DNA of 64,000 nt from assembly GCA_964057225.1 (NCBI GenBank), contig OZ059897.1, forward strand, positions 21,824,001 through 21,888,000, in the 5' to 3' direction. Both the position numbers and the translations under genes were made by a program. Within the stretch, counting starts at the first letter, position 1. Each line of letters starts with the position of its first letter. Of the stretch, positions 3,001 to 56,600 are shown one piece after another. Below the pieces are notes generated by a model that was given only the letters and a program-made list of their open reading frames with translations, was not told where the DNA came from and searched no databases. Origin of the DNA: Auanema rhodensis (taxonomy: Eukaryota > Animalia > Nematoda).

Positions 3001-3508
3001 CTCGCTTCACGTGAAAGATAAAGAGATGCGGTTTTCATAATTAGATTCCCCTTGTCCATATTAGTCTAAAAACAAATTTTTATTGATATTGGTTCATGGT
3101 AACCATGACTTTGAAATTTACGTGAACTTTAATTTATGCTAATTAAATGTACACGTGATGTGCACTTGGTATGTAACTCGCTTCACGTGAAAGATAAAGA
3201 GATGCGGTTTTCAAAATTAGATTCCCCATGTCCATATTAGTCTAAAAACAAATTTTTATTGATATTGGTGCATGGTAACCATGACTTTGAAATTTACGTG
3301 AACTTTAATTTATGCTAATTAAATGTACACGTGATGTGCACTTGGTATGTAACTCGCTTCACGTGAAAGATAAAGAGATGCGGTTTTCAAAATTAGATTC
3401 TTCATGTCCATATTAGTCTAAAAACAAATTTTTATTGATATCGGTGCATGGTAACCATGACTTTGAAATTTACGTGAACTTTAATTTATGCTAATTAAAT
3501 GTACACGT
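1..3508. repeat. 176-bp tandem satellite array, block 1 (~20 monomers)
   Basis: GTATGTAA.. recurs at 1, 177, ... and 2641 (=1+15x176). Consensus GTATGTAACTCGCTTCACGTGAAAGATAAAGAGATGCGGTTTTCAAAATTAGATTCCCCATGTCCATATTAGTCTAAAAACAAATTTTTATTGATATTGGT(G/T)CATGGTAACCATGACTTTGAAATTTACGTGAACTTTAATTTATGCTAATTAAATGTACACGTGATGTGCACTTG. Confidence 0.99.
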
Positions 3509-3522
3509 TTATGTACACGTTT
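3499..3522 (-). repeat. 12-bp tandem duplication at the LINE 3' junction, (AAACGTGTACAT)x2 on the minus strand
   Basis: The plus strand reads ATGTACACGTTT at 3499-3510 and again at 3511-3522. Ten of the 12 bases are satellite target sequence. An AATAAA overlaps it on the minus strand (plus TTTATT 3520-3525). Confidence 0.9.
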
Positions 3523-3712
3523 ATTGGTTTAATGTTCAATATTACAGGTTTAACGAAATGAGTAAATAGTTGTGTAGTAGGATGTATAAGAACCTTACAA
3601 TAGGAACAGGAAAAATAGGAAACATTATAAAACATAGTTAGGGAGAGAATGATCTGAGAATGAGTTGCAGTGAGCAGTTTCTTTCAAATTTTTCCAGTGA
3701 GAACAGGGGGTT

Positions 3713-3856
3713 TTGTTCAGCGAATTGCTGACCTCCGGTTGGTAGTTGTTGGGTACGGAGGTACTCATGATTCGAGCCGAGCCCGTTCTAACAATAGGAG
3801 GTAACTTGCATTCAATCCGTATGACTCATGTCTATAAGATTTGAAGCGAAGTAACA
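3713..3856 (-). ncRNA. Conserved structured cis-RNA element (predicted four-way junction) in the family A 3' UTR
   Basis: Aligns with 49322-49466 although the flanking UTR has diverged. Stems in plus coordinates: 3714-3717/3853-3856, 3718-3721/3727-3730, 3731-3736/3797-3802 and 3804-/-3852, with compensatory changes between families. Folded by hand. Confidence 0.7.
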
Positions 3857-3998
3857 AGAAGTGTAGAAGGGTTGGAAAAAAGAAATGAAACTGTCGCACT
3901 TAGTCATAATCAGAAAAACATTTAAAGAGAAAAAAACAAAAACGCGAAGAGTAATATGAAAAAAAAACAAAACAAAGAGATTATAACCAAGAATGAAC

Positions 3999-6557
3999 TT
4001 AACTACATAAAAATGTGGAAGGATCATGTTGTGAGCCTCGTAGGGCATTGTAGAGGTGTTTCTTGAAGCTTCCGATTTTTGTTTGTTGAATTAGGTTCTC
4101 AGGTAAGGAATTCCATGCCTTTATAGCTCTGTATTCGATGCCGTTTCTTGAAGTGTTTTTCCGAAGATTCGGAAAAACAACATTCCATTGGTGTCTACGT
4201 AGAGAGTGAGAAAAAAGTTTAATTTCAAAAATTCTAAATTCTGCCTCAGCTTTAATATGGTTAAAATAAAATAAAAGATCGGTTACCAGCCTTCTGGTTG
4301 ATAGATCATCGGCTTGAAGAGCGGTAAGCTGATCGGCGTAGCTAGAAAAAATTCCTGCCCTACAAAAAACTGCACGCAAAAACTTTTTCTGTACGTTTTC
4401 TATACGAGCTTTGTTTTTGTTATCCTGTGGTGACCATACGACTGATGCGTACTCAAGAATAGGACGAACATAGCAACAAAAAAGTCTAAACATTAAGACC
4501 GGGGATCTAGAATGAAAACAACGTAGGATAATGCGGCATTTTTGAGCTGCCAAGTTGCTAACATAGTTGATGTGACTACCAAATGATAAGTTTTGGTCTG
4601 TTAAAACTCCGAGGTCTTTATAGCTTGATGCTAGAGACAAAGGGAACTCACCGAAAGAAAACGTTTTTTCAATTTTTTGAGATGAGCTATCATCAGAAAA
4701 CACCATTATTTTAGTTTTGCTTGTGTTGACTCTCATTCCGTTGTTGTTACACCAATCATTAAGAGAATTGAGTGCATTTTGAAGACTTACCCGGTTAGTG
4801 CTGTACAGCTTGAGATCGTCAGCAAATAAAGTGGAATGAACGTCATCAGGGAGAAAAGATGTGATGTCGTTGATGTAAAAAAGAAAAAGAAGAGGGCCTA
4901 AAACAGTACCTTGGGGAACGCCACACAATAAATTGGTAGAGTTGGAGAGAGAATTATTGACCAAAACTGAGTAAGATCTGTTTGTGATGAAATTTTTGAG
5001 AAATGATAGAAGAGAGCCACGCACACCAATGGAGTGAAGTTTGTGGATGAGTATAGAGTGATTGATGAGGTCAAATGCTTTTGAGAAATCTATGAATGCA
5101 ACAAAAACTGGTAAGTTTTTGTCGATAGATGATCTCCAAGCAATATGACTGTTGATAATGGCTGAAACCGTATTACGCTTAGGAAGAAAAGCGTGTTGGT
5201 TAGAAGATATTGAACCGGTTGAAATGCCAAAGTTGAGTAGGGGAGAGCTTATAAGACGCTCAAAAACCTTGGAGAGACTAGGAGTAAGAGATATAGGACG
5301 ATAATTGGAAGGAGTAGAACGATTGCCGGATTTGAAGATTGGTCGAATCCAAGCTTTTTTCCAAGCAGGAGGACAGGATGAGGAAACGAGAAGATTGTGA
5401 AAAATGAAAGCCAGTGGGAGAGTGAGAGAGAAAGCGCATTGTTTGAGAAAGTAGTAAGGAATTCCGTCCGGAGAAGTTGAAACTCTAAGAGGAAGACGAG
5501 AAAGAACCTTGTAGACTTTGTCCGGAGAAATATCTATGAAGTCTATGGTAGAAGAAAAAGCAGGGGAAGGATTTATTTTTTTGAAAGAAGATCCTGGTTT
5601 GACAAAAAAAGTATCTGCGAAAACAGATGCTTTATCGCTGTCGGATGAGTACGTGTTGTTTTCACATTTAATGGTGGGGATATCTGAAGTGCATGCTCCA
5701 AGACGAGCTCTGCAAAATTGATAGAAAATTCTAGGGTTGTTGAGAGCTGCGGTTTTCTCTTCTTCAGAAGCAGATTTAAGTTTCAGAAGTCTATCAAGCT
5801 TGATAGTCAGTTTTTTGCGATGAAGTTCGTCTCGAGGGCAGATAGATGAACTAAGTCTGCTGATAAAACTAGAAAGACTAGCAATTTCTTTATCGATTTT
5901 GTTCTTTCGTTTTGGCTGCTTATAGGGAACAAACCTGTTAATGACAGAGTGAATAATTTCGATAAATTTTGTGTAGGAGTCCAGAGGAGTAAGAACGGAA
6001 AGTTCCGTAGCAAAGTCGATGCTGGCAAGGTGGTGGTTAATTATGTTGTAATCCGCCCGAAGAAAATTGAGTTGAGCAAAGTTTGGTAAAGAAGAATTGA
6101 TAGGTGAAACAACGGGAGGAAGAGACAAATCCGATCTGACAGAGTTGCTGAGTATAGAAAAAATGACAGAGTAGTGGTCGGAGTTACCTAAAGGGGAGGA
6201 ACGGACTATGTTACTGACCATAGTAGAATTATTTGTGATGATGTAGTCGAGAATATATTTTCCCCGGGTAGGAAAATTTACCAGCTGATCCGAACAGCTA
6301 TCTTTCAAAAATTGAAAAATAGATCCACTGGAGGGGGACGGGCGGGAAGATTCAGAAAGATCCCAGTTGATGTAGGGAAAATTTAAATCACCTGTGATGA
6401 GAAATGAACGGTTTTTTATATGGCCAGTAAGATCTGAAAGATAATGAGAAAAATCGGAATGAAGAGAAGAGGGAGAGCGGTAACAAACCGAAAATCTGTG
6501 TTGATAGAAGAGATGAGTATGTTGATGAATTGGACGGAAGAAGATTGAGAAGAACAA
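3999..6557 (-). CDS. LINE ORF2 main frame: C-terminal half of the APE endonuclease plus reverse transcriptase (CR1-like); true coding begins near 6490
   Basis: APE motifs CYRSP, ITGDLNFP, QLVNFPTRG..ILDYI and SDH. RT motifs NYRPISL..SLSKVFER, QHAF, FIDFSKAFD, GVPQGTVLGPLLFLFYIND, LFADDLK and KDLGV. CR1/L2-type C-terminus YVRPILEYASVVWSP..IENVQKKF..WNSLP. Confidence 0.95.
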   Translation of the reverse strand: MFFSIFFRPIHQHTHLFYQHRFSVCYRSPSSLHSDFSHYLSDLTGHIKNRSFLITGDLNFPYINWDLSESSRPSPSSGSIFQFLKDSCSDQLVNFPTRGKYILDYIITNNSTMVSNIVRSSPLGNSDHYSVIFSILSNSVRSDLSLPPVVSPINSSLPNFAQLNFLRADYNIINHHLASIDFATELSVLTPLDSYTKFIEIIHSVINRFVPYKQPKRKNKIDKEIASLSSFISRLSSSICPRDELHRKKLTIKLDRLLKLKSASEEEKTAALNNPRIFYQFCRARLGACTSDIPTIKCENNTYSSDSDKASVFADTFFVKPGSSFKKINPSPAFSSTIDFIDISPDKVYKVLSRLPLRVSTSPDGIPYYFLKQCAFSLTLPLAFIFHNLLVSSSCPPAWKKAWIRPIFKSGNRSTPSNYRPISLTPSLSKVFERLISSPLLNFGISTGSISSNQHAFLPKRNTVSAIINSHIAWRSSIDKNLPVFVAFIDFSKAFDLINHSILIHKLHSIGVRGSLLSFLKNFITNRSYSVLVNNSLSNSTNLLCGVPQGTVLGPLLFLFYINDITSFLPDDVHSTLFADDLKLYSTNRVSLQNALNSLNDWCNNNGMRVNTSKTKIMVFSDDSSSQKIEKTFSFGEFPLSLASSYKDLGVLTDQNLSFGSHINYVSNLAAQKCRIILRCFHSRSPVLMFRLFCCYVRPILEYASVVWSPQDNKNKARIENVQKKFLRAVFCRAGIFSSYADQLTALQADDLSTRRLVTDLLFYFNHIKAEAEFRIFEIKLFSHSLRRHQWNVVFPNLRKNTSRNGIEYRAIKAWNSLPENLIQQTKIGSFKKHLYNALRGSQHDPSTFLCS

Positions 6558-6886
6558 GAAAGTAAGGTAGAGTTAATAGATTTTTTGATGAAGATAAGAG
6601 TGCCGCCGCCACGGGCTGTACACTTGTCGGCTCTGAAAAGATTGTAATAGTTACCGAGCGGAATATGATTAGAGTTGAAATTGGGAAAAAGCCAGGATTC
6701 TGATATAGCAATGATATCAGGAGATGAAATACTATGGATAGTAGTAAGAAAATGAAATTTGTTGAGAATAGAGCGTGCATTATAACAATGAACAGAAAAA
6801 TTAACAGGGACACAGGAACTGGACGTAGTTGACGGTTGTGAAGCCTTAACGAAATAACCTGTTCGTATCAGACTCAGGTTGAGATG
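6482..6886 (-). pseudogene. N-terminal half of the APE endonuclease of ORF2, in a different frame (not in the ORF track)
   Basis: Manual translation of the frame open from 6886: ..VHCYNARSILNKFHFL..SPDIIAISESWLFPNF..GNYYNLFRADKCTARGGGTLIFIKKS..TDFRFV. These are the standard first APE motifs (N-x-R-S, D-I-I-x-x-x-E-x-W-L, R-x-D..R-G-G-G). This frame must shift near 6481-6495 to join VCYRSP in the main frame. Confidence 0.88.
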
Positions 6887-7901
6887 TTATATTAGAACCG
6901 CTTTTAGATCTGGTATGGTACTCGGAATTGGTTTTAGTACAGCGTGGGGGATTTTTCCTCTTTCTGGGGCTGATTGAAAATCTCTCAACCGTAGAAAGAG
7001 GTTTGGATCTACCTGCTGAACGGCTATTCCTACCAGATTTAGAAGGCGGACTGGATATTACAACAGTGTCGGACACAGACGGACAAGGAACGATAGGGTC
7101 ATTTTGGACCACAGGACAGAGACTGGAGACATTTTGAGAAGCATTAATGTTTGAGAGAACATGAATAGAGGGTGAAGTTGATTTACGAAGAACCTTGATA
7201 AGTTTAAGGTCGCGTACAAGGTAAATTGATTCATTATTGTCCAGATTTTTATTTTTAGCTTCCTCACGTAGTTTTTTTTCTATTTCTACCTCGAAAGGAA
7301 GATAGTCGCGGCGAATAAAAGTTTTTGACAAACAAGCAAAGCATTTCGCTTTGTTGGACTTAATGATATCAATAATTTTGTCACGTAAATCAACTGTTGA
7401 ACATGAAATTACAAGAGGACCAAGAGATTTAGATTTTAGAGTTGAACGGGTTATAGTAATTTGGTTGCTGTTAATGAGAGAAGTCAAAGTAGAGTCGTTA
7501 GATTTTTCAACGACAAGTTTTAGGAGAGAAGTGGGGTCCGAGGGTAGTTCGGATGAGTCGTGGGGAACACGAAACCACACCGCTCTATTCAAACGATAGG
7601 AAAACTTTGACTCCTCAGATCTAACTTTTTGAACCTGACACAGAACAGTAGAAGAGGATGATTGAGAGGTAGAAGTAACAATAGATTTTGATACATTAAG
7701 AAATTTCTTTTCTAAACCCTCAATACGTAACTTGAAATCGTCTTCGAGATTTTTAATACGCATTTCATTAACCGCAACATTGGTTTTAATGTTGTTCAGC
7801 TCGTTTTTAATTTCAGCAGAAAGTTGTGAAAAAGAATCACGAAGAGATTTGGAAAGAACATCAAGTGTTTCAGTAAAAAAATCTTTTGTTACAACTGACA
7901 T
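6846..7901 (-). CDS. LINE ORF1 protein (351 aa; coiled coil, RRM/CTD-like region, basic Ser-rich tail)
   Basis: Likely start ATG at 7901 (MSVVTKDFF). Heptad-rich N-terminus (LSKSLRDSFSQLSAEIKNELNNIKTNV..MRIKNLEDDFKLRIEGLEKK), then motifs typical of L1/CR1-type ORF1 (GPLVI..LRDKII, FIRRDY..E..LREEA..YLVRDLKL). Lies directly upstream of APE-RT. Confidence 0.85.
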   Translation of the reverse strand: MSVVTKDFFTETLDVLSKSLRDSFSQLSAEIKNELNNIKTNVAVNEMRIKNLEDDFKLRIEGLEKKFLNVSKSIVTSTSQSSSSTVLCQVQKVRSEESKFSYRLNRAVWFRVPHDSSELPSDPTSLLKLVVEKSNDSTLTSLINSNQITITRSTLKSKSLGPLVISCSTVDLRDKIIDIIKSNKAKCFACLSKTFIRRDYLPFEVEIEKKLREEAKNKNLDNNESIYLVRDLKLIKVLRKSTSPSIHVLSNINASQNVSSLCPVVQNDPIVPCPSVSDTVVISSPPSKSGRNSRSAGRSKPLSTVERFSISPRKRKNPPRCTKTNSEYHTRSKSGSNITSQPESDTNRLFR

Positions 7902-8084
7902 GATAATATTGAAAAAAAAAGTGAATGAAAATAGGAAAAATAGAGAGATAAAAACAAGTGAAAATGGAGAAAAGATAGGTGATACAAATGAGAAAGATAA
8001 GTAAAAAAGTGAGTAATGGACAAGAAAAAATAAATGAAAAAAAATTAGAATAAATGTATAAAAACAGGAAAAAGTAGCGTAAAG
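7902..8084 (-). other. Pyrimidine-rich 5' UTR of the family A element
   Basis: 183 nt between the satellite junction and the ORF1 ATG. Strongly T/C-rich on the sense strand. Confidence 0.65.
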
Positions 8085-10999
8085 CACGTGATGTGCACTT
8101 GGTATGTAACTTGCTTCACGTGAAAGATAAAGAGATGCGGTTTTCAAAATTAGATTCCCCATGTCCATATTAGTCTAAAAACAAATTTTTATTGATATTG
8201 GTGCATGGTAACCATGACTTTGAAATTTACGTCTACTTTAATTTATGCTAATTAAATGTACACGTGATGTGCACTTGGTATGTAACTCGCTTCACGTGAA
8301 AGATAAAGAGATGCGGTTTTCAAAATTAGATTCCCCATGTCCATATTAGTCTAAAAACAAATTTTTATTGATATTGGTGCATGGTAACCATGACTTTGAA
8401 ATTTACGTCTACTTTAATTTATGCTAATTAAATGTACACGTGATGTGCACTTGGTATGTAACTCGCTTCACGTGAAAGATAAAGAGATGCGGTTTTCAAA
8501 ATTAGATTCCCCATGTCCATATTAGTCTAAAAACAAATTTTTATTGATATTGGTGCATGGTAACCATGACTTTGAAATTTACGTGAACTTTAATTTATGC
8601 TAATTAAATGTACACGTGATGTGCACTTGGTATGTAATTCGCTTCACGTGAAAGATAAAGAGATGCGGTTTTTACAATTAGATTCCCCATGTCCATATTA
8701 GTCTAAAAACAAATTTTTATTGATATTGGTTCATGGTAACCATGACTTTGAAATTTACGTGAACTTAAATTTATGCTAATTAAATGTACACGTGATGTGC
8801 ACTTGGTATGTAACTTGCTTCACGTGAAAGATAAAGAGATGCGGCTTTCAAAATTAGATTCCCCATGTCCATATTAGTCTAAAAACAAATTTTTATTGAT
8901 ATTGGTGCATGGTAACCATGACTTTGAAATTTACGTGAACTTTAATTTATGCTAATTAAATGTACACGTGATGTGCACTTGGTATGTAACTCGCTTCACG
9001 TGAAAGATAAAGAGATGCGGTTTTCAAAATTAGATTCCCCATGTCCATATTAGTCTAAAAACAAATTTTTATTGATATTGGTGCATGGTAACCATGACTT
9101 TGAAATTTACGTGAACTTTAATTTATGCTAATTAAATGTACACGTGATGTGCACTTGGTATGTAACTCGCTTCACGTGAAAGATAAAGAGATGCGGTTTT
9201 CAAAATTAGATTTCCCATGTCCATATTAGTCTAAAAACAAATTTTTATTGATATTGGTTCATGGTAACCATGACTTTGAAATTTACGTGAACTTTAATTT
9301 ATGCTAATTAAATGTACACGTGATGTGCACTTGGTATGTAACTTGCTTCACGTGAAAGATAAAGAGATGCGGCTTTCAAAATTAGATTCCCCATGTCCAT
9401 ATTAGTCTAAAAACAAATTTTTATTGATATTGGTGCATGGTAACCATGACTTTGAAATTTACGTGAACTTTAATTTATGCTAATTAAATGTACACGTGAT
9501 GTGCACTTGGTATGTAACTCGCTTCACGTGAAAGATAAAGAGATGCGGTTTTCAAAATTAGATTCCCCATGTCCATATTAGTCTAAAAACAAATTTTTAT
9601 TGATATTGGTGCATGGTAACCATGACTTTGAAATTTACGTGAACTTTAATTTATGCTAATTAAATGTACACGTGATGTGCACTTGGTATGTAACTCGCTT
9701 CACGTGAAAGATAAAGAGATGCGGTTTTCAAAATTAGATTCCCCATGTCCATATTAGTCTAAAAACAAATTTTTATTGATATTGGTTCATGGTAACCATG
9801 ACTTTGAAATTTACGTGAACTTTAATTTATGCTAATTAAATGTACACGTGATGTGCACTCGGTATGTAACTCGCTTCACGTGAAAGATAAAGAGATGCGG
9901 TTTTCAAAATTAGATTCCCCATGTCCATATTAGTCTAAAAACAAATTTTTATTGATATTGGTGCATGGTAACCATGACTTTGAAATTTACGTGAACTTTA
10001 ATTTATGCTAATTAAATGTACACGTGATGTGCACTTGGTATGTAACTCGCTTCACGTGAAAGATAAAGAGATGCGGTTTTCAAAATTAGATTCCCCATGT
10101 CCATATTAGTCTAAAAACAAATTTTTATTGATATTGGTGCGTGGTAACCATGATTTTGAAATTTACGTGAACTTTAATTTATGCTAATTAAATATACACG
10201 TGATGTGCACTTGGTATGTAACTCGCTTCACGTGAAAGATAAAGAGATGCAGTTTTCAAAATTAGATTCCCCATGTCCATATTAGTCTAAAAACAAATTT
10301 TTATTGATATTGGTTCATGGTAACCATGACTTTGAAATTTACGTGAACTTAAATTTATGCTAATTAAATGTACACGTGATGTGCACTTGGTATGTAACTT
10401 GCTTCACGTGAAAGATAAAGAGATGCGGTTTTCAAAATTAGATTCCCCATGTCCATATTAGTCTAAAAACAAATTTTTATTGATATTGGTGCATGGTAAC
10501 CATGACTTTGAAATTTACGTGAACTTTAATTTATGCTAATTAAATGTACACGTGATGTGCACTTGGTATGTAACTCGCTTCACGTGAAAGATAAAGAGAT
10601 GCGGTTTTCAAAATTAGATTCCCCATGTCCATATTAGTCTAAAAACAAATTTTTATTGATATTGGTGCGTGGTAACCATGATTTTGAAATTTACGTGAAC
10701 TTTAATTTATGCTAATTAAATGTACACGTGATGTGCACTTGGTATGTAACTCGCTTCACGTGAAAGATAAAGAGATGCAGTTTTCAAAATTAGATTCCCC
10801 ATGTCCATATTAGTCTAAAAACAAATTTTTATTGATATTGGTTCATGGTAACCATGACTTTGAAATTTACGTGAACTTAAATTTATGCTAATTAAATGTA
10901 CACGTGATGTGCACTTGGTATGTAACTTGCTTCACGTGAAAGATAAAGAGATGCGGTTTTCAAAATTAGATTCCCCATGTCCATATTAGTCTAAAAACA

Positions 11000-13900: not shown

Positions 13901-14700
13901 GTGCACTTGGTATGTAACTCGCTTCACGTGAAAGATAAAGAGATGCGGTTTTCAAAATTAGATTCCCCATGTCCATATTAGTCTAAAAACAAATTTTTAT
14001 TGATATTGGTGCGTGGTAACCATGACTTTGAAATTTACGTGAACTTTAATTTATGCTAATTAAATGTACACGTGATGTGCACTTGGTATGTAACTCGCTT
14101 CACGTGAAAGATAAAGAGATGCGGTTTCCAAAATTAGATTCCCCATGTCCATATTAGTCTAAAAACAAATTTTTATTGATATTGGTTCATGGTAACCATG
14201 ACTTTGAAATTTACGTGAACTTAAATTTATGCTAATTAAATGTACACGTGATGTGCACTTGGTATGTAACTTGCTTCACGTGAAAGATAAAGAGATGCGG
14301 TTTTCAAAATTAGATTCCCCATGTCCATATTAGTCTAAAAACAAATTTATATTGATATTGGTGCATGGTAACCATGACTTTGAAATTTACGTGAACTTTA
14401 ATTTATGCTAATTAAATGTACACGTGATGTGCACTTGGTATGTAACTCGCTTCACGTGAAAGATAAAGAGATGCGGTTTTCAAAATTAGATTCCCCATGT
14501 CCATATTAGTCTAAAAACAAATTTTTATTGATATTGGTGCATGGTAACCATGACTTTGAAATTTACGTGAATTTTAATTTATGCTAATTAAATGTACACG
14601 TGATGTGCACTTGGTATGTAACTCGCTTCACGTGAAAGATAAAGAGATGCGGTTTTCAAAATTAGATTCCCCATGTCTATATTAGTCTAAAAACAAATTT
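11000..14700. repeat. 10-monomer (1760-bp) higher-order repeat, about 2 copies
   Basis: Diagnostic variants recur at +1760: CCATGTCTAT at 11151/12911/14671, ATGCCCATAT at 11681/13441, ACAAATTTAT at 12581/14341. Boundaries approximate. Confidence 0.85.
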
Positions 14701-32000: not shown

Positions 32001-32190
32001 ATTTATGCTAATTAAATGTACACGTGATGTGCACTTGGTATGTAACTCGCTTCACGTGAAAGATAAAGAGATGCGGTTTTCAAAATTAGATTCCCCATGT
32101 CCATATTAGTCTAAAAACAAATTTTTATTGATATTGGTGCATGGTAACCATGACTTTGAAATTTACGTGAACTTTAATTTATGCTAATTA
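17050..32190. repeat. 43-monomer (7568-bp) tandem duplication
   Basis: Rare variants recur at +7568: CCCCATCT 17133/24701, ATTTTCAT 19273/26841, ACTTTGTAT 20241/27809, and the CATGAATT variant base at 24410/31978. Boundaries approximate. Confidence 0.88.
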
Positions 32191-47100: not shown

Positions 47101-49321
47101 ATGGTAACCATGACTTTGAAATTTACGTGAACTTTGATTTATGCTAATTAAATGTACACGTGATGTGCACTTGGTATGTAACTCGCTTCACGTGAAAGAT
47201 AAAGAGATGCGGTTTTCAAAATTAGATTCCTCATGTCCATATTAGTCTAAAAACAAATTTTTATTGATATTGGTTCATGGTAACCATGACTTTGAAATTT
47301 ACGTGAACTTTAATTTATGCTAATTAAATGTACACGTGATGTGCACTTGGTATGTAACTCGCTTCACGTGAAAGATAAAGAGATGCGGTTTTCAAAATTA
47401 GATTCCTCATGTCCATATTAGTCTAAAAACAAATTTTTATTGATATTGGTTCATGGTAACCATGACTTTGAAATTTACGTGAACTTTAATTTATGCTAAT
47501 TAAATGTACACGTGATGTGCACTTGGTATGTAACTCGCTTCACGTGAAAGATAAAGAGATGCGGTTTTCAAAATTAGATTCCCCATGTCCATATTAGTCT
47601 AAAAACAAATTTTTATTGATATTGGTGCATGGTAACCATGACTTTGAAATTTACGTGAACTTTAATTTATGCTAATTAAATGTACACGTGATGTGCACTT
47701 GGTATGTAACCCGCTTCACGTGAAAGATAAAGAGATGCGGTTTTCAAAATTAGATTCCCCATGTCCATATTAGTCTAAAAACAAAATTTTATTGATATTG
47801 GTTCATGGTAACCATGACTTTGAAATTTACGTGAACTTTGATTTATGCTAATTAAATGTACACGTGATGTGCACTTGGTATGTAACTCGCTTCACGTGAA
47901 AGATAAAGAGATGCGGTTTTCAAAATTAGATTCCCCAAGTCCATATTAGTCTAAAAACAAATTTTTATTGATATTGGTTCATGGTAACCATGACTTTGAA
48001 ATTTACGTGAACTTTAATTTATGCTAATTAAATGTACACGTGATGTGCACTTGGTATGTAACTCGCTTCACGTGAAAGATAAAGAGATGCGGTTTTCAAA
48101 ATTAGATTCCCCATGTCCATATTAGTCTAAAAACAAATTTTTATTGATATTGGTTCATGGTAACCATGACTTTGAAATTTACGTGAACTTTGATTTATGC
48201 TAATTAAATGTACACGTGATGTGCACTTGGTATGTAACTCGCTTCACGTGAAAGATAAAGAGATGCGGTTTTCAAAATTAGATTCCTCATGTCCATATTA
48301 GTCTAAAAACAAATTTTTATTGATATTGGTTCATGGTAACCATGACTTTGAAATTTACGTGAACTTTAATTTATGCTAATTAAATGTACACGTGATGTGC
48401 ACTTGGTATGTAACTCGCTTCACGTGAAAGATAAAGAGATGCGGTTTTCAAAATTAGATTCCTCATGTCCATATTAGTCTAAAAACAAATTTTTATTGAT
48501 ATTGGTTCATGGTAACCATGACTTTGAAATTTACGTGAACTTTAATTTATGCTAATTAAATGTACACGTGATGTGCACTTGGTATGTAACTCGCTTCACG
48601 TGAAAGATAAAGAGATGCGGTTTTCAAAATTAGATTCCCCATGTCCATATTAGTCTAAAAACAAATTTTTATTGATATTGGTGCATGGTAACCATGACTT
48701 TGAAATTTACGTGAACTTTAATTTATGCTAATTAAATGTACACGTGATGTGCACTTGGTATGTAACCCGCTTCACGTGAAAGATAAAGAGATGCGGTTTT
48801 CAAAATTAGATTCCCCATGTCCATATTAGTCTAAAAACAAAATTTTATTGATATTGGTTCATGGTAACCATGACTTTGAAATTTACGTGAACTTTGATTT
48901 ATGCTAATTAAATGTACACGTGATGTGCACTTGGTATGTAACTCGCTTCACGTGAAAGATAAAGAGATGCGGTTTTCAAAATTAGATTCCCCATGTCCAT
49001 ATTAGTCTAAAAACAAAATTTTATTGATATTGGTTCATGGTAACCATGACTTTGAAATTTACGTGAACTTTGATTTATGCTAATTAAATGTACACGTTTG
49101 AACGGGTTTATTGTTCGAATCACAGGTTAAAAGCGGAAACAATGTTAATAAATAGAGAAAATTGTAGATATACAGAAGAACCTTACAATACAAACATACA
49201 TAATAATTGGCTAGATATATGTAAATAAACGAGTCGTGCATATTTCCTTTTATTATGATAGCGTACAGCACTACTGGTGTGTTAAAGTTTCGAAGTTCTA
49301 GTTAGGTAAAGGAGAGAAAAG

Positions 49322-49466
49322 TTGTTCAGTGTAGATCACTGACCTCTGTAGTATTCTGACAGGTGCGGTGGAACTCTTGACATGAGTCGAGCCCGTTCTG
49401 ACAGTAAGAGGTAACTAACGCTTGATCCATATGACTAATGTCTATAGGATTCGGAGCATAGTAACA
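49322..49466 (-). ncRNA. Conserved structured 3' UTR RNA element, family B copy 1
   Basis: Homologous to 3713-3856 with covarying stems (ACCUCU/AGAGGU versus ACCUCC/GGAGGU; CAGUG/CACUG versus CAGC/GCUG). Confidence 0.7.
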
Positions 49467-49583
49467 GGTCTCGGAGGTTAACTAGGAAACTGTCTAGCTA
49501 TAACATGCAGTGAGGCTAGCAGGCTAGTAATATGGAAAAAAATATACATGAGCAAGATTTCAAGTTACATTAATCAGAGCAGG

Positions 49584-49872
49584 TTAAAAATCATTTAAAA
49601 TAACAGATAGGTGTTTTCTGAAGCTGGAGGTGTTTCTCAGTTGAATGATGTTTTCAGGAAGAGCGTTCCAGATTTGAATAGCTCTGTATTCAATTCCAGT
49701 TCTAGTTTCGCTTCTCCAAAGATCAGGATATTCAACATTCCATAGATGCCTACGAAGTGAATGTGCGTAGTGCTTGATAGTAAAAAAATTAAGGCTGTTT
49801 TCTGGAATGTTTTTAGTTATCTGATTGTGATAGAAGACGAGATCAATTAACAGTCTTCTAAAAGATAGAGAT
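49584..49872 (-). pseudogene. ORF2 (RT) C-terminal fragment, family B
   Basis: LSFRRLLIDLVFY..HSLRRHLWNV..RTGIEYRAIQIWNALPENIIQ..SFRKHL aligns to family A LSTRRLVTDLLFY..HSLRRHQWNV..RNGIEYRAIKAWNSLPENLIQ..SFKKHL (about half identical). Confidence 0.93.
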
Positions 49873-52868
49873 ACGTGATGTGCACTTGGTATGTAACCCG
49901 CTTCACGTGAAAGATAAAGAGATGCGGTTTTCAAAATTAGATTCCCCATGTCCATATTAGTCTAAAAACAAATTTTTATTGATATTGGTGCATGGTAACC
50001 ATGACTTTGAAATTTACGTGAACTTTAATTTATGCTAATTAAATGTACACGTGATGTGCACTTGGTATGTAACTCGCTTCACGTGAAAGATAAAGAGATG
50101 CGGTTTTCAAAATTAGATTCCCCATGTCCATATTAGTCTAAAAACAAATTTTTATTGATATTGGTGCATGGTAACCATGACTTTAAAATTTACGTGAACT
50201 TTAATTTATGCTAATTAAATGTACACGTGATGTGCACTTGGTATGTAACTCGCTTCACGTGAAAGATAAAGAGATGCGGTTTTCAAAATTAGATTCCCCA
50301 TGTCCATATTAGTCTAAAAACAAATTTTTATTGATATTGGTTCATGGTAACCATGACTTTGAAATTTACGTGAACTTTAATTTATGCTAATTAAATGTAC
50401 ACGTGATGTGCACTTGGTATGTAACTCGCTTCACGTGAAAGATAAAGAGATGCGGTTTTCAAAATTAGATTCCCCAAGTCCATATTAGTCTAAAAACAAA
50501 TTTTTATTGATATTGGTTCATGGTAACCATGACTTTGAAATTTACGTGAACTTTAATTTATGCTAATTAAATGTACACGTGATGTGCACTTGGTATGTAA
50601 CTCGCTTCACGTGAAAGATAAAGAGATGCGGTTTTCAAAATTAGATTCCCCATGTCCATATTAGTCTAAAAACAAATTTTTATTGATATTGGTGCATGGT
50701 AACCATGACTTTGAAATTTACGTGAACTTTAATTTATGCTAATTAAATGTACACGTGATGTGCACTTGGTATGTAACTCGCTTCACGTGAAAGATAAAGA
50801 GATGCGGTTTTCAAAATTAGATTCCCCATGTCCATATTAGTCTAAAAACAAATTTTTATTGATATTGGTGCATGGTAACCATGACTTTGAAATTTACGTG
50901 AACTTTAATTTATGCTAATTAAATGTACACGTGATGTGCACTTGGTATGTAACTCGCTTCACGTGAAAGATAAAGAGATGCGGTTTTCAAAATTAGATTC
51001 CGCATGTCCATATTAGTCTAAAAACAAATTTTTATTGATATTGGTTCATGGTAACCATGACTTTGAAATTGACGTGAACTTTAATTTATGCTAATTAAAT
51101 GTACACGTGATGTGCACTTGGTATGTAACTCGCTTCAAGTGAAAGATAAAGAGATGCGGTTCTCAAAATTAGATTCCCCATGTCCATATTAGTCTAAAAA
51201 CAAATTTTTATTGATATTGGTGCATGGTAACCATGACTTTGAAATTTACGTGAACTTTGATTTATGCTAATTAAATGTACACGTGATGTGCACTTGGTAT
51301 GTAACTCGCTTCACGTGAAAGATAAAGAGATGCGGTTTTCAAAATTAGATTCCCCAAGTCCATATTAGTCTAAAAACAAATTTTTATTGATATTGGTTCA
51401 TGGTAACCATGACTTTGAAATTTACGTGAACTTTGATTTATGCTAATTAAATGTACACGTGATGTGCACTTGGTATGTAACTCGCTTCACGTGAAAGATA
51501 AAGAGATGCGGTTTTCAAAATTAGATTCCCCATGTCCATATTAGTCTAAAAACAAATTTTTATTGATATTGGTTCATGGTAACCATGACTTTGAAATTTA
51601 CGTGAACTTTGATTTATGCTAATTAAATGTACACGTGATGTGCACTTGGTATGTAACTCGCTTCACGTGAAAGATAAAGAGATGCGGTTTTCAAAATTAG
51701 ATTCCCCATGTCCATATTAGTCTAAAAACAAATTTTTATCGATATTGGTTCATGGTAACCATGACTTTGAAATTTACGTGAACTTTAATTTATGCTAATT
51801 AAATGTACACGTGATGTGCACTTGGTATGTAACTCGCTTCACGTGAAAGATAAAGAGATGCGGTTTTCACAATTAGGTTCCCCATGTCCATATTAGTCTA
51901 AAAACAAATTTTTATTGATATTGGTGCATGGTAACCATGACTTTGAAATTTACGTGAACTTTAATTTATGCTAATTAAATGTACACGTGATGTGCACTTG
52001 GTATGTAACTCGCTTCACGTGAAAGATAAAGAGATGCGGTTTTCAAAATTAGATTCCCCAAGTCCATATTAGTCTAAAAACAAATTTTTATTGATATTGG
52101 TTCATGGTAACCATGACTTTGAAATTTACGTGAACTTTAATTTATGCTAATTAAATGTACACGTGATGTGCACTTGGTATGTAACTCGCTTCACGTGAAA
52201 GATAAAGAGATGCGGTTTTCAAAATTAGATTCCCCATGTCCATATTAGTCTAAAAACAAATTTTTATTGATATTGGTTCATGGTAACCATGACTTTGAAA
52301 TTTACGTGAACTTTGATTTATGCTAATTAAATGTACACGTGATGTGCACTTGGTATGTAACTCGCTTCACGTGAAAGATAAAGAGATGCGGTTTTCAAAA
52401 TTAGATTCCCCATGTCCATATTAGTCTAAAAACAAATTTTTATCGATATTGGTTCATGGTAACCATGACTTTGAAATTTACGTGAACTTTAATTTATGCT
52501 AATTAAATGTACACGTGATGTGCACTTGGTATGTAACTCGCTTCACGTGAAAGATAAAGAGATGCGGCTTTCAAAATTAGATTCCCCATGTCCATATTAG
52601 TCTAAAAACAAATTTTTATCGATATTGGTTCATGGTAACCATGACTTTGAAATTTACGTGAACTTTAATTTATGCTAATTAAATGTACACGTGATGTGCA
52701 CTTGGTATGTAACTCGCTTCACGTGAAAGATAAAGAGATGCGGTTTTCAAAATTAGATTCCCCATGTCCATATTAGTCTAAAAACAAATTTTTATTGATA
52801 TTGGTTCATGGTAACCATGACTTTGAAATTTACGTGAACTTTAATTTATGCTAATTAAATGTACACGT
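49873..52868. repeat. 176-bp satellite, block 3 (17 monomers)
   Basis: 2996 bp = 17x176 + 4-bp duplication. Confidence 0.99.
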
Positions 52869-53092
52869 TTGAACGGGTTTATTGTTCGAATCACAGGTTA
52901 AAAGCGGAAACAATGTTAATAAATAGAGAAAATTGTAGATATACAGAAGAACCTTACAATACAAACATACATAATAATTGGCTAGATATATGTAAATAAA
53001 CGAGTCGTGCATATTTCCTTTTATTATGATAGCGTACAGCACTACTGGTGTGTTAAAGTTTCGAAGTTCTAGTTAGGTAAAGGAGAGAAAAG

Positions 53093-53237
53093 TTGTTCAG
53101 TGTAGATCACTGACCTCTGTAGTATTCTGACAGGTGCGGTGGAACTCTTGACATGAGTCGAGCCCGTTCTGACAGTAAGAGGTAACTAACGCTTGATCCA
53201 TATGACTAATGTCTATAGGATTCGGAGCATAGTAACA
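53093..53237 (-). ncRNA. Conserved structured 3' UTR RNA element, family B copy 2
   Basis: Copy of 49322-49466 at +3771. Confidence 0.7.
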
Positions 53238-53354
53238 GGTCTCGGAGGTTAACTAGGAAACTGTCTAGCTATAACATGCAGTGAGGCTAGCAGGCTAGTA
53301 ATATGGAAAAAAATATACATGAGCAAGATTTCAAGTTACATTAATCAGAGCAGG

Positions 53355-53643
53355 TTAAAAATCATTTAAAATAACAGATAGGTGTTTTCTGAAGCTGGAG
53401 GTGTTTCTCAGTTGAATGATGTTTTCAGGAAGAGCGTTCCAGATTTGAATAGCTCTGTATTCAATTCCAGTTCTAGTTTCGCTTCTCCAAAGATCAGGAT
53501 ATTCAACATTCCATAGATGCCTACGAAGTGAATGTGCGTAGTGCTTGATAGTAAAAAAATTAAGGCTGTTTTCTGGAATGTTTTTAGTTATCTGATTGTG
53601 ATAGAAGACGAGATCAATTAACAGTCTTCTAAAAGATAGAGAT
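53355..53643 (-). pseudogene. ORF2 (RT) C-terminal fragment, family B copy 2
   Basis: Translation identical to 49584-49872. Confidence 0.93.
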
Positions 53644-56600
53644 ACGTGATGTGCACTTGGTATGTAACCCGCTTCACGTGAAAGATAAAGAGATGCGGTT
53701 TTCAAAATTAGATTCCCCATGTCCATATTAGTCTAAAAACAAATTTTTATTGATATTGGTGCATGGTAACCATGACTTTGAAATTTACGTGAACTTTAAT
53801 TTATGCTAATTAAATGTACACGTGATGTGCACTTGGTATGTAACTCGCTTCACGTGAAAGATAAAGAGATGCGGTTTTCAAAATTAGATTCCCCATGTCC
53901 ATATTAGTCTAAAAACAAATTTTTATTGATATTGGTGCATGGTAACCATGACTTTAAAATTTACGTGAACTTTAATTTATGCTAATTAAATGTACACGTG
54001 ATGTGCACTTGGTATGTAACTCGCTTCACGTGAAAGATAAAGAGATGCGGTTTTCAAAATTAGATTCCCCATGTCCATATTAGTCTAAAAACAAATTTTT
54101 ATTGATATTGGTTCATGGTAACCATGACTTTGAAATTTACGTGAACTTTAATTTATGCTAATTAAATGTACACGTGATGTGCACTTGGTATGTAACTCGC
54201 TTCACGTGAAAGATAAAGAGATGCGGTTTTCAAAATTAGATTCCCCATGTCCATATTAGTCTAAAAACAAATTTTTATTGATATTGGTTCATGGTAACCA
54301 TGACTTTGAAATTTACGTGAACTTTAATTTATGCTAATTAAATGTACACGTGATGTGCACTTGGTATGTAACTCGCTTCACGTGAAAGATAAAGAGATGC
54401 GGTTTTCAAAATTAGATTCCCCATGTCCATATTAGTCTAAAAACAAATTTTTATTGATATTGGTGCATGGTAACCATGACTTTGAAATTTACGTGAACTT
54501 TAATTTATGCTAATTAAATGTACACGTGATGTGCACTTGGTATGTAACTCGCTTCACGTGAAAGATAAAGAGATGCGGTTTTCAAAATTAGATTCCCCAT
54601 GTCCATATTAGTCTAAAAACAAATTTTTATTGATATTGGTGCATGGTAACCATGACTTTGAAATTTACGTGAACTTTAATTTATGCTAATTAAATGTACA
54701 CGTGATGTGCACTTGGTATGTAACTCGCTTCACGTGAAAGATAAAGAGATGCGGTTTTCAAAATTAGATTCCGCATGTCCATATTAGTCTAAAAACAAAT
54801 TTTTATTGATATTGGTTCATGGTAACCATGACTTTGAAATTGACGTGAACTTTAATTTATGCTAATTAAATGTACACGTGATGTGCACTTGGTATGTAAC
54901 TCGCTTCAAGTGAAAGATAAAGAGATGCGGTTCTCAAAATTAGATTCCCCATGTCCATATTAGTCTAAAAACAAATTTTTATTGATATTGGTGCATGGTA
55001 ACCATGACTTTGAAATTTACGTGAACTTTGATTTATGCTAATTAAATGTACACGTGATGTGCACTTGGTATGTAACTCGCTTCACGTGAAAGATAAAGAG
55101 ATGCGGTTTTCAAAATTAGATTCCCCAAGTCCATATTAGTCTAAAAACAAATTTTTATTGATATTGGTTCATGGTAACCATGACTTTGAAATTTACGTGA
55201 ACTTTGATTTATGCTAATTAAATGTACACGTGATGTGCACTTGGTATGTAACTCGCTTCACGTGAAAGATAAAGAGATGCGGTTTTCAAAATTAGATTCC
55301 CCATGTCCATATTAGTCTAAAAACAAATTTTTATTGATATTGGTTCATGGTAACCATGACTTTGAAATTTACGTGAACTTTGATTTATGCTAATTAAATG
55401 TACACGTGATGTGCACTTGGTATGTAACTCGCTTCACGTGAAAGATAAAGAGATGCGGTTTTCAAAATTAGATTCCCCATGTCCATATTAGTCTAAAAAC
55501 AAATTTTTATCGATATTGGTTCATGGTAACCATGACTTTGAAATTTACGTGAACTTTAATTTATGCTAATTAAATGTACACGTGATGTGCACTTGGTATG
55601 TAACTCGCTTCACGTGAAAGATAAAGAGATGCGGTTTTCACAATTAGGTTCCCCATGTCCATATTAGTCTAAAAACAAATTTTTATTGATATTGGTGCAT
55701 GGTAACCATGACTTTGAAATTTACGTGAACTTTAATTTATGCTAATTAAATGTACACGTGATGTGCACTTGGTATGTAACTCGCTTCACGTGAAAGATAA
55801 AGAGATGCGGTTTTCAAAATTAGATTCCCCAAGTCCATATTAGTCTAAAAACAAATTTTTATTGATATTGGTTCATGGTAACCATGACTTTGAAATTTAC
55901 GTGAACTTTAATTTATGCTAATTAAATGTACACGTGATGTGCACTTGGTATGTAACTCGCTTCACGTGAAAGATAAAGAGATGCGGTTTTCAAAATTAGA
56001 TTCCCCATGTCCATATTAGTCTAAAAACAAATTTTTATTGATATTGGTTCATGGTAACCATGACTTTGAAATTTACGTGAACTTTGATTTATGCTAATTA
56101 AATGTACACGTGATGTGCACTTGGTATGTAACTCGCTTCACGTGAAAGATAAAGAGATGCGGTTTTCAAAATTAGATTCCCCATGTCCATATTAGTCTAA
56201 AAACAAATTTTTATTGATATTGGTGCATGGTAACCATGACTTTGAAATTTACGTGAACTTTGATTTATGCTAATTAAATGTACACGTGATGTGCACTTGG
56301 TATGTAACTCGCTTCACGTGAAAGATAAAGAGATGCGGTTTTCAAAATTAGATTCCCCATGTCCATATTAGTCTAAAAACAAATTTTTATTGATATTGGT
56401 GCATGGTAACCATGACTTTGAAATTTACGTGAACTTTGATTTATGCTAATTAAATGTACACGTGATGTGCACTTGGTATGTAACTCGCTTCACGTGAAAG
56501 ATAAAGAGATGCGGTTTTCAAAATTAGATTCCCCATGTCCATATTAGTCTAAAAACAAATTTTTATTGATATTGGTGCATGGTAACCATGACTTTGAAAT

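What the first reader, a model, noticed from the sequence alone, without database searches (positions are those of the whole stretch)
3499..53647. Two diverged CR1-like LINE families insert at the identical nucleotide of a 176-bp satellite: candidate satellite-specific retrotransposon lineage
Seen: family A (3' junction after 3508) and family B (after 49097 and 52868) both follow ...CTAATTAAATGTACACGT, both on the minus strand, and both begin with TT on the plus strand. Both resume in the satellite at (C)ACGTGATG with 4-5 bp duplications. The families share only about half their RT C-terminal residues and have different 5' ends, so these are at least two independent events. Under uniform insertion, the chance of a second event matching site and strand is about 1 in 352. 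The monomer has two other ACGT dyads that are not used. Established: sequence-specific APE LINEs are known mainly in the R1 clade (28S rDNA, SART/TRAS telomeric repeats) and the Tx1 clade (U2, tRNA and 5S arrays); CR1-type elements are generally regarded as non-specific. Inference: an old lineage with conserved specificity for this satellite, implying the target motif is as old as the split between the families and uses the array as a safe harbour.
Basis: partly seen in the sequence, partly recalled or inferred. Interest (0 to 1): 0.92.

Follow-up and report, generated by a model that had tools for sequence, protein, structure and literature searches.

The report
LINE clade aimed at a germline-only satellite
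This worm genome (almost certainly Auanema rhodense) holds at least eleven related jumping-gene families that insert at just two exact spots in one 176-bp repeat, a repeat the animal discards from all body cells, so they appear to have specialised on DNA where insertions cost the host little.

Summary

**The setting.** The window is a 176-bp satellite with three LINE insertions. A is 4576 bp. B1 and B2 are 775 bp each, and they are one event copied by a 3771-bp array duplication. The assembly size and a published FISH probe identify the satellite as AT-1 of Auanema rhodense. [quoted passage not shown] It makes up at least 11.6% of the assembly.

**Genome-wide pattern.** At least 11 LINE families form one clade. 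They share 45-86% amino-acid identity with A, and the nearest outside relative is 36% identical.
- Families A, B, C, D, F and K insert after ...TGTACACGT (site 1).
- Families G, H, I and J insert on the other strand after ...GCATAAATTA (site 2), 27 bp away.
- Of about 75 loci I examined, about 58 sit at one of these two sites, 3 elsewhere in AT-1, and 14 outside it.
- Different 5' truncation points give at least 15 independent events.

**Site choice.** RT and endonuclease trees agree with each other and require at least 3 switches between the two sites. An off-target copy carrying 7 nt of AT-1, and two junctions that duplicate the target, point to read-through RNA pairing with the nicked target.

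**Limits.** CR1-group affinity is supported, but I could not test it against named reference elements. Other first-reader notes in this scan flagged the same LINE-in-satellite pattern in other windows of this genome.

The parts
1..3508 (+). AT-1 satellite array, 176-bp unit, 19.9 copies
   Evidence: TRF. The published AT-1 FISH probe is the reverse complement of the monomer stretch ATGTACACGTGATGTGCACTTGGTATGT.
3482..3508 (.). The 27-bp monomer segment bracketed by the two LINE nick sites. Site 1 is after 3508 on the plus strand. Site 2 is on the minus strand, opposite the 3481/3482 step. Site 2 is empty in this monomer.
   Evidence: Sequence. Site 2 was defined from families G, H, I and J elsewhere in the genome.
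3504..3508 (+). Left copy of the 5-bp target-site duplication CACGT of insert A
3509..8084 (-). Family A LINE, 4576 bp. It has ORF1, ORF2 and a 3' UTR, and lacks the 5' tandem-repeat leader seen in a longer copy.
3509..3520 (-). Private 12-nt tail TTATGTACACGT, which is a second copy of the last 10 nt of the target plus TT
   Evidence: Contigs of three other runs show a 12-nt gap here.
3509..4001 (-). 3' UTR of A. A core at about 3700-3860 and the terminal CTGTRAT..GAACAATAAAC block are conserved across families.
3999..6572 (-). Open frame of ORF2: second half of the endonuclease, the RT and the C-terminal domain (857 codons plus the stop at 3999-4001)
6419..6886 (-). First half of the ORF2 endonuclease in another frame. 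This copy has a private 1-nt deletion near 6490 that breaks the frame.
   Evidence: Other runs show 'A put in behind 6490'. The C4 copy has one open 962-codon frame.
6846..7901 (-). ORF1 (351 codons from the first internal ATG, plus the stop at 6846-6848). Coiled-coil N-terminus, no Pfam family, no CCHC motif.
8085..8089 (+). Right copy of the target-site duplication CACGT of insert A
8085..49097 (+). AT-1 array, 233 monomers
49098..49872 (-). Family B LINE, a 5'-truncated 775-bp copy (last 95 codons of ORF2 plus the 3' UTR). TSD ACGT at 49094-49097 and 49873-49876.
49098..52868 (.). First copy of a 3771-bp duplicated block (LINE B plus 17 monomers)
52869..53643 (-). Second copy of the same family B insertion, made by array duplication rather than a new insertion event
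53644..64000 (+). AT-1 array, 58.8 monomers

Best explanation
A diversified clade of endonuclease-bearing (APE-type), CR1-like LINEs has specialised on the AT-1 satellite, most likely of Auanema rhodense.

How insertion works (inferred from the junctions):
- The elements insert by target-primed reverse transcription at two fixed nicks that bracket one 27-bp stretch of the monomer.
- At site 1 the plus strand is cut after ...TGTACACGT. Families A, B, C, D, F and K use it.
- At site 2 the minus strand is cut after ...GCATAAATTA. Families G, H, I and J use it.
- The freed 3' end primes cDNA synthesis. A second nick 4-6 bp away gives the short target-site duplication.

How the site is chosen (inferred): donor copies are transcribed a few nucleotides into the flanking satellite. 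The RNA 3' end can therefore pair with the nicked target, which sets the register of priming. The protein probably adds a preference for the two nick sites. Neither contribution has been measured.

Consequence (inferred): AT-1 has about 120,000 copies and is discarded from somatic cells. Insertions there should cost the host little, and the elements stay confined to the germline.
For: Census:
- 119,642 intact target 25-mers give at least 21 Mb, or 11.6% of the assembly.
- There are 52 exact occupied site-1 junctions. Family F and variant-flank junctions add more.
- There are 9 + 22 exact site-2 junctions.
- 24 of 29 H/I 3' ends are at site 2.

Independence of events:
- Family A copies at site 1 end at different 5' points: 4576 bp, a longer copy, and inserts of 1816, 1429 and 955 bp.
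- Family D has seven different extents.
- A 24-nt family J remnant at site 2 has a 5-bp TSD, AATTA.
- Contigs from four runs in three studies show the same junctions, including B- and D-type ends at site 1.

One clade: RT tree support is 100/99, and the endonuclease tree is congruent. The nearest outside proteins are 36% identical.

Read-through RNA:
- An off-target family C copy inside a 332-bp satellite carries 7 extra nt, ACGTGTA. These match the start of the AT-1 flank and are absent from the native monomers there.
- The window's A copy and one J copy duplicate 10-13 nt of the target at the junction.

The site is not set by the element's own tail: the last 5-8 nt differ between families that share a site.

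Germline restriction: the published AT-1 probe matches the monomer across site 1, and AT-1 is lost from the soma from the 12-cell stage.
Against: - No biochemical or RNA evidence exists. No RNA run holds the element, so transcription, read-through and nicking specificity are inferred from junctions only.
- About 19% of examined loci are outside AT-1 and 3 are elsewhere in AT-1, so specificity is strong but not absolute.
- Site use does not follow either protein tree. No residues track the site better than in random partitions: 13% of random partitions reached the observed count in the N-terminal half and 25% in the C-terminal half. A protein-encoded determinant is therefore unproven.
- Satellite arrays are hard to assemble, and some copies are array duplicates.
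- The species identity rests on the assembly size and one probe sequence.
- CR1-group membership was not tested against named references.
Confidence: 0.87

Rival explanations
1. Site choice is wholly RNA-guided. The endonuclease nicks loosely at A/T-rich sites, and only the co-transcribed flank of the donor copy, by pairing with the target, decides where cDNA synthesis starts. The insertion site is then inherited through the donor's position, not through the protein.
For: - At least 3 site switches appear on both the RT and the endonuclease trees.
- No residues correlate with site beyond random partitions.
- An off-target copy carries 7 nt of transduced AT-1.
- Two junctions duplicate the target.
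- Off-target flanks share little beyond ending in T, G or A.
Against: - The same two nucleotide positions were reached independently at least three times.
- The three off-site AT-1 insertions have not founded families. That points to an intrinsic preference for the two sites.
- A nick must still be made next to the pairing site.
Confidence: 0.2
2. A few chance insertions were copied many times by unequal crossing-over and exchange between arrays, as proposed for LINE copies with identical flanks in other satellite arrays.
For: - B1 and B2 are such a duplicate.
- Contig C7 has 12 junctions at roughly 2-kb spacing, and several other pairs share extents.
- This reading is given for LINEs in bird centromere arrays in 10.64898/2026.09.17.752431.
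Against: - At least 11 families with 45-86% identity use the two sites.
- Within a family, the 5' ends differ while the satellite resumes within 1-3 nt of the same phase.
- The copies lie on six chromosome-scale contigs and many small ones.
Confidence: 0.03
3. Insertion is random, but only copies at these two positions in AT-1 are retained, because other insertions are removed by selection or by array homogenisation.
For: Off-target copies are all 5'-truncated, and several lie in other satellites.
Against: - Selection cannot plausibly tell apart positions a few bases away in a non-coding 176-bp repeat that is discarded from the soma.
- Family A copies are 98-100% identical, too young for such sorting.
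Confidence: 0.03

Closest known systems
TRAS1 and SART1 (R1 clade, Bombyx telomeric repeats)
   Same: APE-type LINEs with nucleotide-precise insertion into a tandem repeat. Related families take opposite strands of the same repeat. The RNA 3' end contributes to accurate priming. The SART1 3' UTR and tail requirement is cited in PMC3747384. The rest is my own knowledge.
   Different: - The target here is a 176-bp satellite, not a 5-bp telomeric unit.
- There are no CCHC motifs in ORF1 or ORF2.
- ORF2 resembles CR1-type elements end to end.
- The two sites were exchanged repeatedly within one clade.
R1 and R2 of 28S rDNA, where the co-transcribed or read-through target sequence helps set the junction
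   Same: Multicopy tandem target, fixed nick site, and target sequence at the RNA 3' end helping the junction. The R2 3' UTR role is cited in PMC3747384. The R1Bm read-through is my own knowledge.
   Different: R2 has a restriction-like endonuclease and a single ORF. Here the endonuclease is APE-type and there are two ORFs. The target is non-coding DNA restricted to the germline.
Tx1-clade target-specific LINEs (Tx1, Keno, Mutsu, Kibi, Koshi)
   Same: APE-type LINEs aimed at repeated sequences. Together with R1, they are listed as the main APE-type target-specific groups (PMC4640811).
   Different: Those belong to the L1 group and target snRNA, 5S or tRNA genes, transposons or microsatellites. 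Nothing here shows Tx1-type features, and no CCHC motif was found.
YURE and Utopia (RLE-type) in U2-derived satellites of Ciona
   Same: A LINE with a preference for a satellite-type tandem repeat (PMC4640811).
   Different: Those have a restriction-like endonuclease, weak specificity, and a target derived from a gene. Here about 77% of examined loci are at two exact nucleotides.
Stringent-type CR1 and L2 LINEs (chicken CR1, eel UnaL2)
   Same: A conserved 3' UTR element, short 3' repeat units that vary in number as if by slippage, and no poly(A). UnaL2 TGTAA repeats and slippage are described in PMC3747384. Here the tails are (TAAA)n, (AAAC)n and CATTAAA units.
   Different: Those elements are dispersed and have no known site specificity.

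Membership tests
Target-site-specific APE-type LINE (functional class) | Independent copies share the same insertion nucleotide and orientation | tested here: met
   Site 1 has 52 exact junctions and six families. Site 2 has 31 exact junctions and four families. The 5' truncation points differ between copies.
Target-site-specific APE-type LINE (functional class) | Most genomic copies lie in the target | tested here: met
   About 58 of about 75 examined loci are at the two sites, 3 elsewhere in AT-1, and 14 outside it. AT-1 is at least 11.6% of the assembly.
Target-site-specific APE-type LINE (functional class) | Hallmarks of target-primed reverse transcription: short target-site duplications and 5' truncation | tested here: met
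   TSDs are CACGT, ACGT and ACACGT at site 1 and AATTA at site 2.
Target-site-specific APE-type LINE (functional class) | The endonuclease cuts the target sequence specifically in vitro | not testable with these tools
The catalytic-type motifs are present in all ten families aligned.
CR1 group of LINEs | ORF2 has APE plus RT, without RNase H or a C-terminal CCHC motif | tested here: met
   Pfam finds only Exo_endo_phos and RVT_1. A regular-expression search finds no CCHC.
CR1 group of LINEs | Collinear similarity to CR1-type ORF2 through the C-terminal domain | tested here: met
   28% identity over 849 residues, E = 8e-92, to a Podarcis protein whose C-terminus reads VRPHLEY...WNLLP...FK. Its 90% cluster also holds an esterase-type ORF1. 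Calling that protein CR1-type rests on my own knowledge of the chicken CR1 motif.
CR1 group of LINEs | 3' end without poly(A), short repeat units, conserved 3' UTR element | tested here: met
CR1 group of LINEs | RT groups with named CR1, L2 or Daphne references rather than Jockey, I, R1 or Tx1 | not testable with these tools
   No named reference sequences could be fetched. The hits found were unnamed.
R1 clade | ORF1 with CCHC zinc knuckles and a Cys-His motif after the RT | tested here: not met
   No CCHC in ORF1 or ORF2. No Pfam zinc-knuckle hit.
R2 / RLE-type site-specific LINEs | Single ORF with a C-terminal restriction-like endonuclease | tested here: not met
   Two ORFs and an N-terminal APE domain. 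The PDB R2 proteins match only the RT domain.

The most novel reading that the evidence does not exclude
The insertion site is carried by the RNA rather than encoded in the protein. Each copy transcribes a few bases of its own flank, and that flank guides the next insertion to the same place. Under this reading the site is inherited by position and can be re-set by one stray insertion, which would explain at least three switches between two sites without matching protein changes. This would be a natural LINE whose target is programmable through its template. It would live almost wholly in DNA that the animal deletes from its body cells, and it may help shape those megabase arrays.
Probability: 0.3. 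Interest if true: 0.92.

Novelty: new variant of a known kind. Interest (0 to 1): 0.85.

Why it matters
- **A new home for site specificity.** Site-specific APE-type LINEs are known mainly from the R1 and Tx1 clades (PMC4640811). A CR1-like clade with nucleotide-precise specificity would add an independent origin of targeting.
- **A new kind of target.** The target is a megabase satellite that is thrown away in every somatic cell (10.64898/2026.08.27.747507). This links programmed DNA elimination with transposon safe-harbour strategies in an animal.
- **A route to how LINEs choose sites.** The two-site system comes with repeated switches, many young copies, and junctions that record the RNA 3' end. 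Together these offer a natural experiment on how far the protein and how far the template RNA decide where a LINE inserts. That question also matters for retrotransposon-based gene insertion tools.
- **A dating tool.** The insertions give dated markers inside arrays that are otherwise featureless.

Tried and rejected
- **Endonuclease fold.** Single-sequence structure prediction of the endonuclease domain failed (mean pLDDT 32), so no fold comparison was made.
- **Naming the clade.** The PDB sequence search gave only distant L1 and R2 RT matches. The Atlas searches gave unnamed LINE clusters for ORF2 and only sub-threshold leads for ORF1, namely Baculo_FP and L1 ORF1-like. Neither names the clade.
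- **Closest outside relatives.** The contigs carrying them were too short or uninformative about targets.
- **R8 of Hydra.** I recalled it as a CR1-group site-specific element. The literature places it inside R2, so I dropped it.
- **Pattern controls.** Controls for the other ACGT dyads and for the opposite orientation first looked positive (362, 26 and 2 hits). They proved to be monomer variants, a deletion and an inverted satellite junction.
- **Site-correlated residues.** The search gave 11 and 7 columns, no more than random partitions give.
- **5' junctions of long copies.** Two attempts to catch the 5' junction of long site-2 copies missed it.
- **Elimination coordinates.** The paper's supplementary tables are not held, so the elimination status of off-target copies is untested.
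- **Tool limits.** Most of the census therefore rests on coordinates and short flanks. One over-loose pattern gave mostly noise.
Full report
**What is in the window**

The window is a 176-bp satellite, 97-98% homogeneous, interrupted three times.
- Insert A spans 3509-8084 (4576 bp).
- Inserts B1 and B2 span 49098-49872 and 52869-53643 (775 bp each).
- All three lie on the minus strand and follow ...CTAATTAAATGTACACGT.
- The satellite resumes at CACGTGATG after A, giving a 5-bp target-site duplication (TSD). It resumes at ACGTGATG after B, giving a 4-bp TSD.

Insert A carries two ORFs.
- ORF1 has 351 codons, no Pfam family and no CCHC motif.
- ORF2 has an APE-type endonuclease and an RVT_1 reverse transcriptase.
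- In this copy the endonuclease is split by a 1-nt deletion near 6490. Other runs and a copy on contig C4 do not share it.

B is the last 95 codons of a related ORF2 plus its 3' UTR. B1 and B2 are one event: a 3771-bp block (the LINE plus 17 monomers) is duplicated almost without mismatches.

**Which genome and which satellite**

The assembly has 180,911,798 bases. A 2026 preprint describes a 180.9-Mb germline assembly of Auanema rhodense, in which 61% of the DNA is lost from somatic cells from the 12-cell stage. Most of that DNA is megabase tandem repeats (10.64898/2026.08.27.747507).

The preprint's FISH probe for 'AT-1' is the reverse complement of this monomer across the LINE target site. 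AT-1 is the eliminated autosome-terminal repeat present on all autosomes. The preprint says only that many genes in eliminated DNA derive from transposons. It does not mention targeted LINEs.

I count 119,642 intact copies of a 25-mer spanning the target. That is at least 21 Mb, or 11.6% of the assembly.

**Genome-wide test of the observation**

The 3' UTR of A finds nine near-identical copies. Seven sit after ...TGTACACGT in the satellite and two lie outside it.

Using the whole of A as a query shows different 5' extents at that same site:
- the window copy, 4576 bp;
- a longer copy on C4 that continues into a 5' leader;
- inserts of 1816, 1429 and 955 bp.

After these the satellite resumes at phase 175, 0 or 3.

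A pattern search finds 52 exact occupied junctions on six chromosome-scale contigs and many small ones. A scan of conserved 3' ends together with short fetched flanks shows the same site and strand for families C, D, F and K as well.

Contigs from four public runs in three studies show the canonical A junction. They also show B-type and D-type ends at the same place.

Hits that looked like junctions at the other ACGT motifs, or in the opposite orientation, were satellite variants or rearrangements.

**A second site**

A protein census gives 87 RT-bearing matches. By amino-acid identity to A they fall into these families:

| Family | Identity to A (%) |
|---|---|
| C | 85-86 |
| D | 74 |
| B | 67-69 |
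| F | 67 |
| H | 66-67 |
| I | 65-66 |
| G | 65 |
| K | 47 |
| J | 45-47 |
| M | 47 |

Families G, H, I and J are inserted in the opposite orientation after ...GCATAAATTA.
- There are 9 exact junctions with (TTTA)n tails and 22 with GTCAAGG-type ends.
- 24 of 29 H/I 3' ends are there.
- A 24-nt remnant of J at this site has a 5-bp TSD, AATTA.

The two nicks are 27 bp apart on opposite strands, so the same 27-bp segment (window 3482-3508) lies just upstream of each nick.

Of about 75 loci whose flanks I read:
- about 58 are at one of the two sites;
- 3 are elsewhere in AT-1, all in reverse orientation near GACTAATATGGACAT;
- 14 are outside AT-1, several of them inside other satellites of 332, 164 and 399 bp.

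**Relationships**

On an RT tree all eleven families form one clade (support 100/99) on a long stem. The nearest outside proteins, from metagenome or Logan contigs, are only 36% identical.

The topology is (K,(J,M)) + (G,((D,(A,C)),(B,(F,(H,I))))). The endonuclease-region tree is congruent with it. Site use needs at least three changes on either tree: K versus J, F versus H/I, and G versus the rest.

Columns whose residues separate site-1 from site-2 families are no more frequent than under random partitions.

**How it most likely works**

Shown directly by sequence: fixed 3' junctions, short TSDs, variable 5' truncation, and short 3' repeat units that vary in number. The units are (TAAA)n, (AAAC)n and CATTAAA. 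These are the marks of target-primed reverse transcription.

Also shown:
- The last 5-8 nt differ between families that share a site, so the element's own tail does not define the site.
- An off-target family C copy inside a 332-bp satellite carries seven extra bases, ACGTGTA. They equal the start of the AT-1 flank and are absent from neighbouring monomers there.
- The window's A copy repeats the last 10 nt of the target plus two T, and this is private to the copy.
- One J copy repeats 13 nt of its target.

Inferred: transcripts of resident copies run 7-13 nt into the flank, just past a conserved AAUAAA-containing terminus. This tail pairs with the 3' end of the nicked target and fixes where cDNA synthesis starts.

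Also inferred: the protein has some intrinsic preference for the two nick sites, because the same two nucleotides were reached repeatedly while stray AT-1 insertions founded no family. How much each contributes is open, and I give the purely RNA-guided version as a rival at 0.2.

**Comparison with known systems**

- The behaviour resembles TRAS/SART and R1. Those are precise APE-type insertions into a tandem repeat, with related families on opposite strands and a role for the RNA 3' end.
- Membership of R1 or Tx1 is not supported by structure, since there are no CCHC motifs.
- ORF2 aligns end to end with a lizard CR1-type protein through the C-terminal VRPxLEY...WNxLP..FK region.
- The 3' UTR is of the conserved 'stringent' kind, with repeat tails and no poly(A) (background in PMC3747384).
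- R8 of Hydra, which I first recalled as a CR1 case, lies within R2.
- A formal phylogeny with named references could not be run, so 'CR1 group' is supported but not proven.

**Rivals**

Array amplification of a few events is real locally. Examples are B1/B2 and a run of 12 junctions on C7. The same reading is given for LINEs with identical flanks in other satellites. It cannot explain eleven diverged families or the different truncation points.

Retention bias is implausible for near-identical young copies in non-coding DNA that is discarded from the soma.

**Verdict**

The finding is real and stronger than stated. It is a species-wide, multi-family, two-site targeting system aimed at a germline-restricted satellite.

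It is a new variant of a known kind, site-specific LINEs. The clade affinity is unusual, the type of target is new, and the pattern of site switching makes the protein-versus-RNA question testable.

Other first-reader notes of this scan flagged the same LINE-in-satellite pattern in other windows of this genome. None showed a follow-up.

Noticed in passing
L058:4785-5000; L118:300-701; L119:240-701: The longest copies of families A, G and H carry a 5' leader beyond ORF1. It has a shared motif (..CCAGTCCGGCGTAAA..) followed by family-specific tandem repeats of 19-20 bp. This resembles the repeated 5' promoter units of some LINEs. The window's A copy is truncated just inside this leader.
   Followed up: partly
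window, monomer phases 160-175 and 0-15 (e.g. 3493-3508 plus 8085-8100): In the 322 in-register monomers of the window, the longest invariant run (32 nt, under 1% variation) spans site 1. By a rough estimate, a run this long has about a 3% chance given 36 variable positions. It may reflect a constraint or bound factor, or it may be chance.
   Followed up: partly
window 8085-8168 and 49873-49955: The reading frames of ORF1 (in A) and of the truncated ORF2 (in B) stay open across the 5' junction into the satellite and reach an ATG there (MDMGNLILK...). This is probably a side effect of the T-rich strand, but it would allow translation from satellite-initiated transcripts.
   Followed up: no
genome-wide, e.g. 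G000:C1:484830-506946 and C4:651445-668914: 791 monomers carry A, C or T instead of G at the base just after the site-1 nick (ACACGT|G). They often occur in local higher-order patterns. Whether such variants escape insertion was not tested.
   Followed up: no
G000:C7:480964-510320: Twelve occupied site-1 junctions lie at 1.4-5.7-kb spacing on one strand. A LINE fragment together with a few monomers seems to have become a higher-order repeat unit of the array.
   Followed up: no
L013/L014, L015, L016/L017 (G000:C5:10.94 Mb, C8:9.17 Mb, C3:11.20 Mb): Off-target family C copies lie inside other tandem repeats of 332, 164 and 399 bp near chromosome centres. These may be the central eliminated repeat blocks described for this species.
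   Followed up: partly
window, monomer phase 118 (period-352 TRF row): A G/T dimorphism (149 versus 173 monomers) at one position gives the array a 352-bp dimer periodicity.
   Followed up: no
G000:C6:21562483-21571447: Two family D copies face each other about 9 kb apart at site 1. One is complete to query position 4411 and the other to 4122. This is an inverted pair inside the array.
   Followed up: no
L062 (G000:C1:18175320-18175430): An AT-1 monomer is joined head to head to inverted AT-1 sequence at an ACGT motif. This is an array inversion breakpoint rather than a LINE end.
   Followed up: partly
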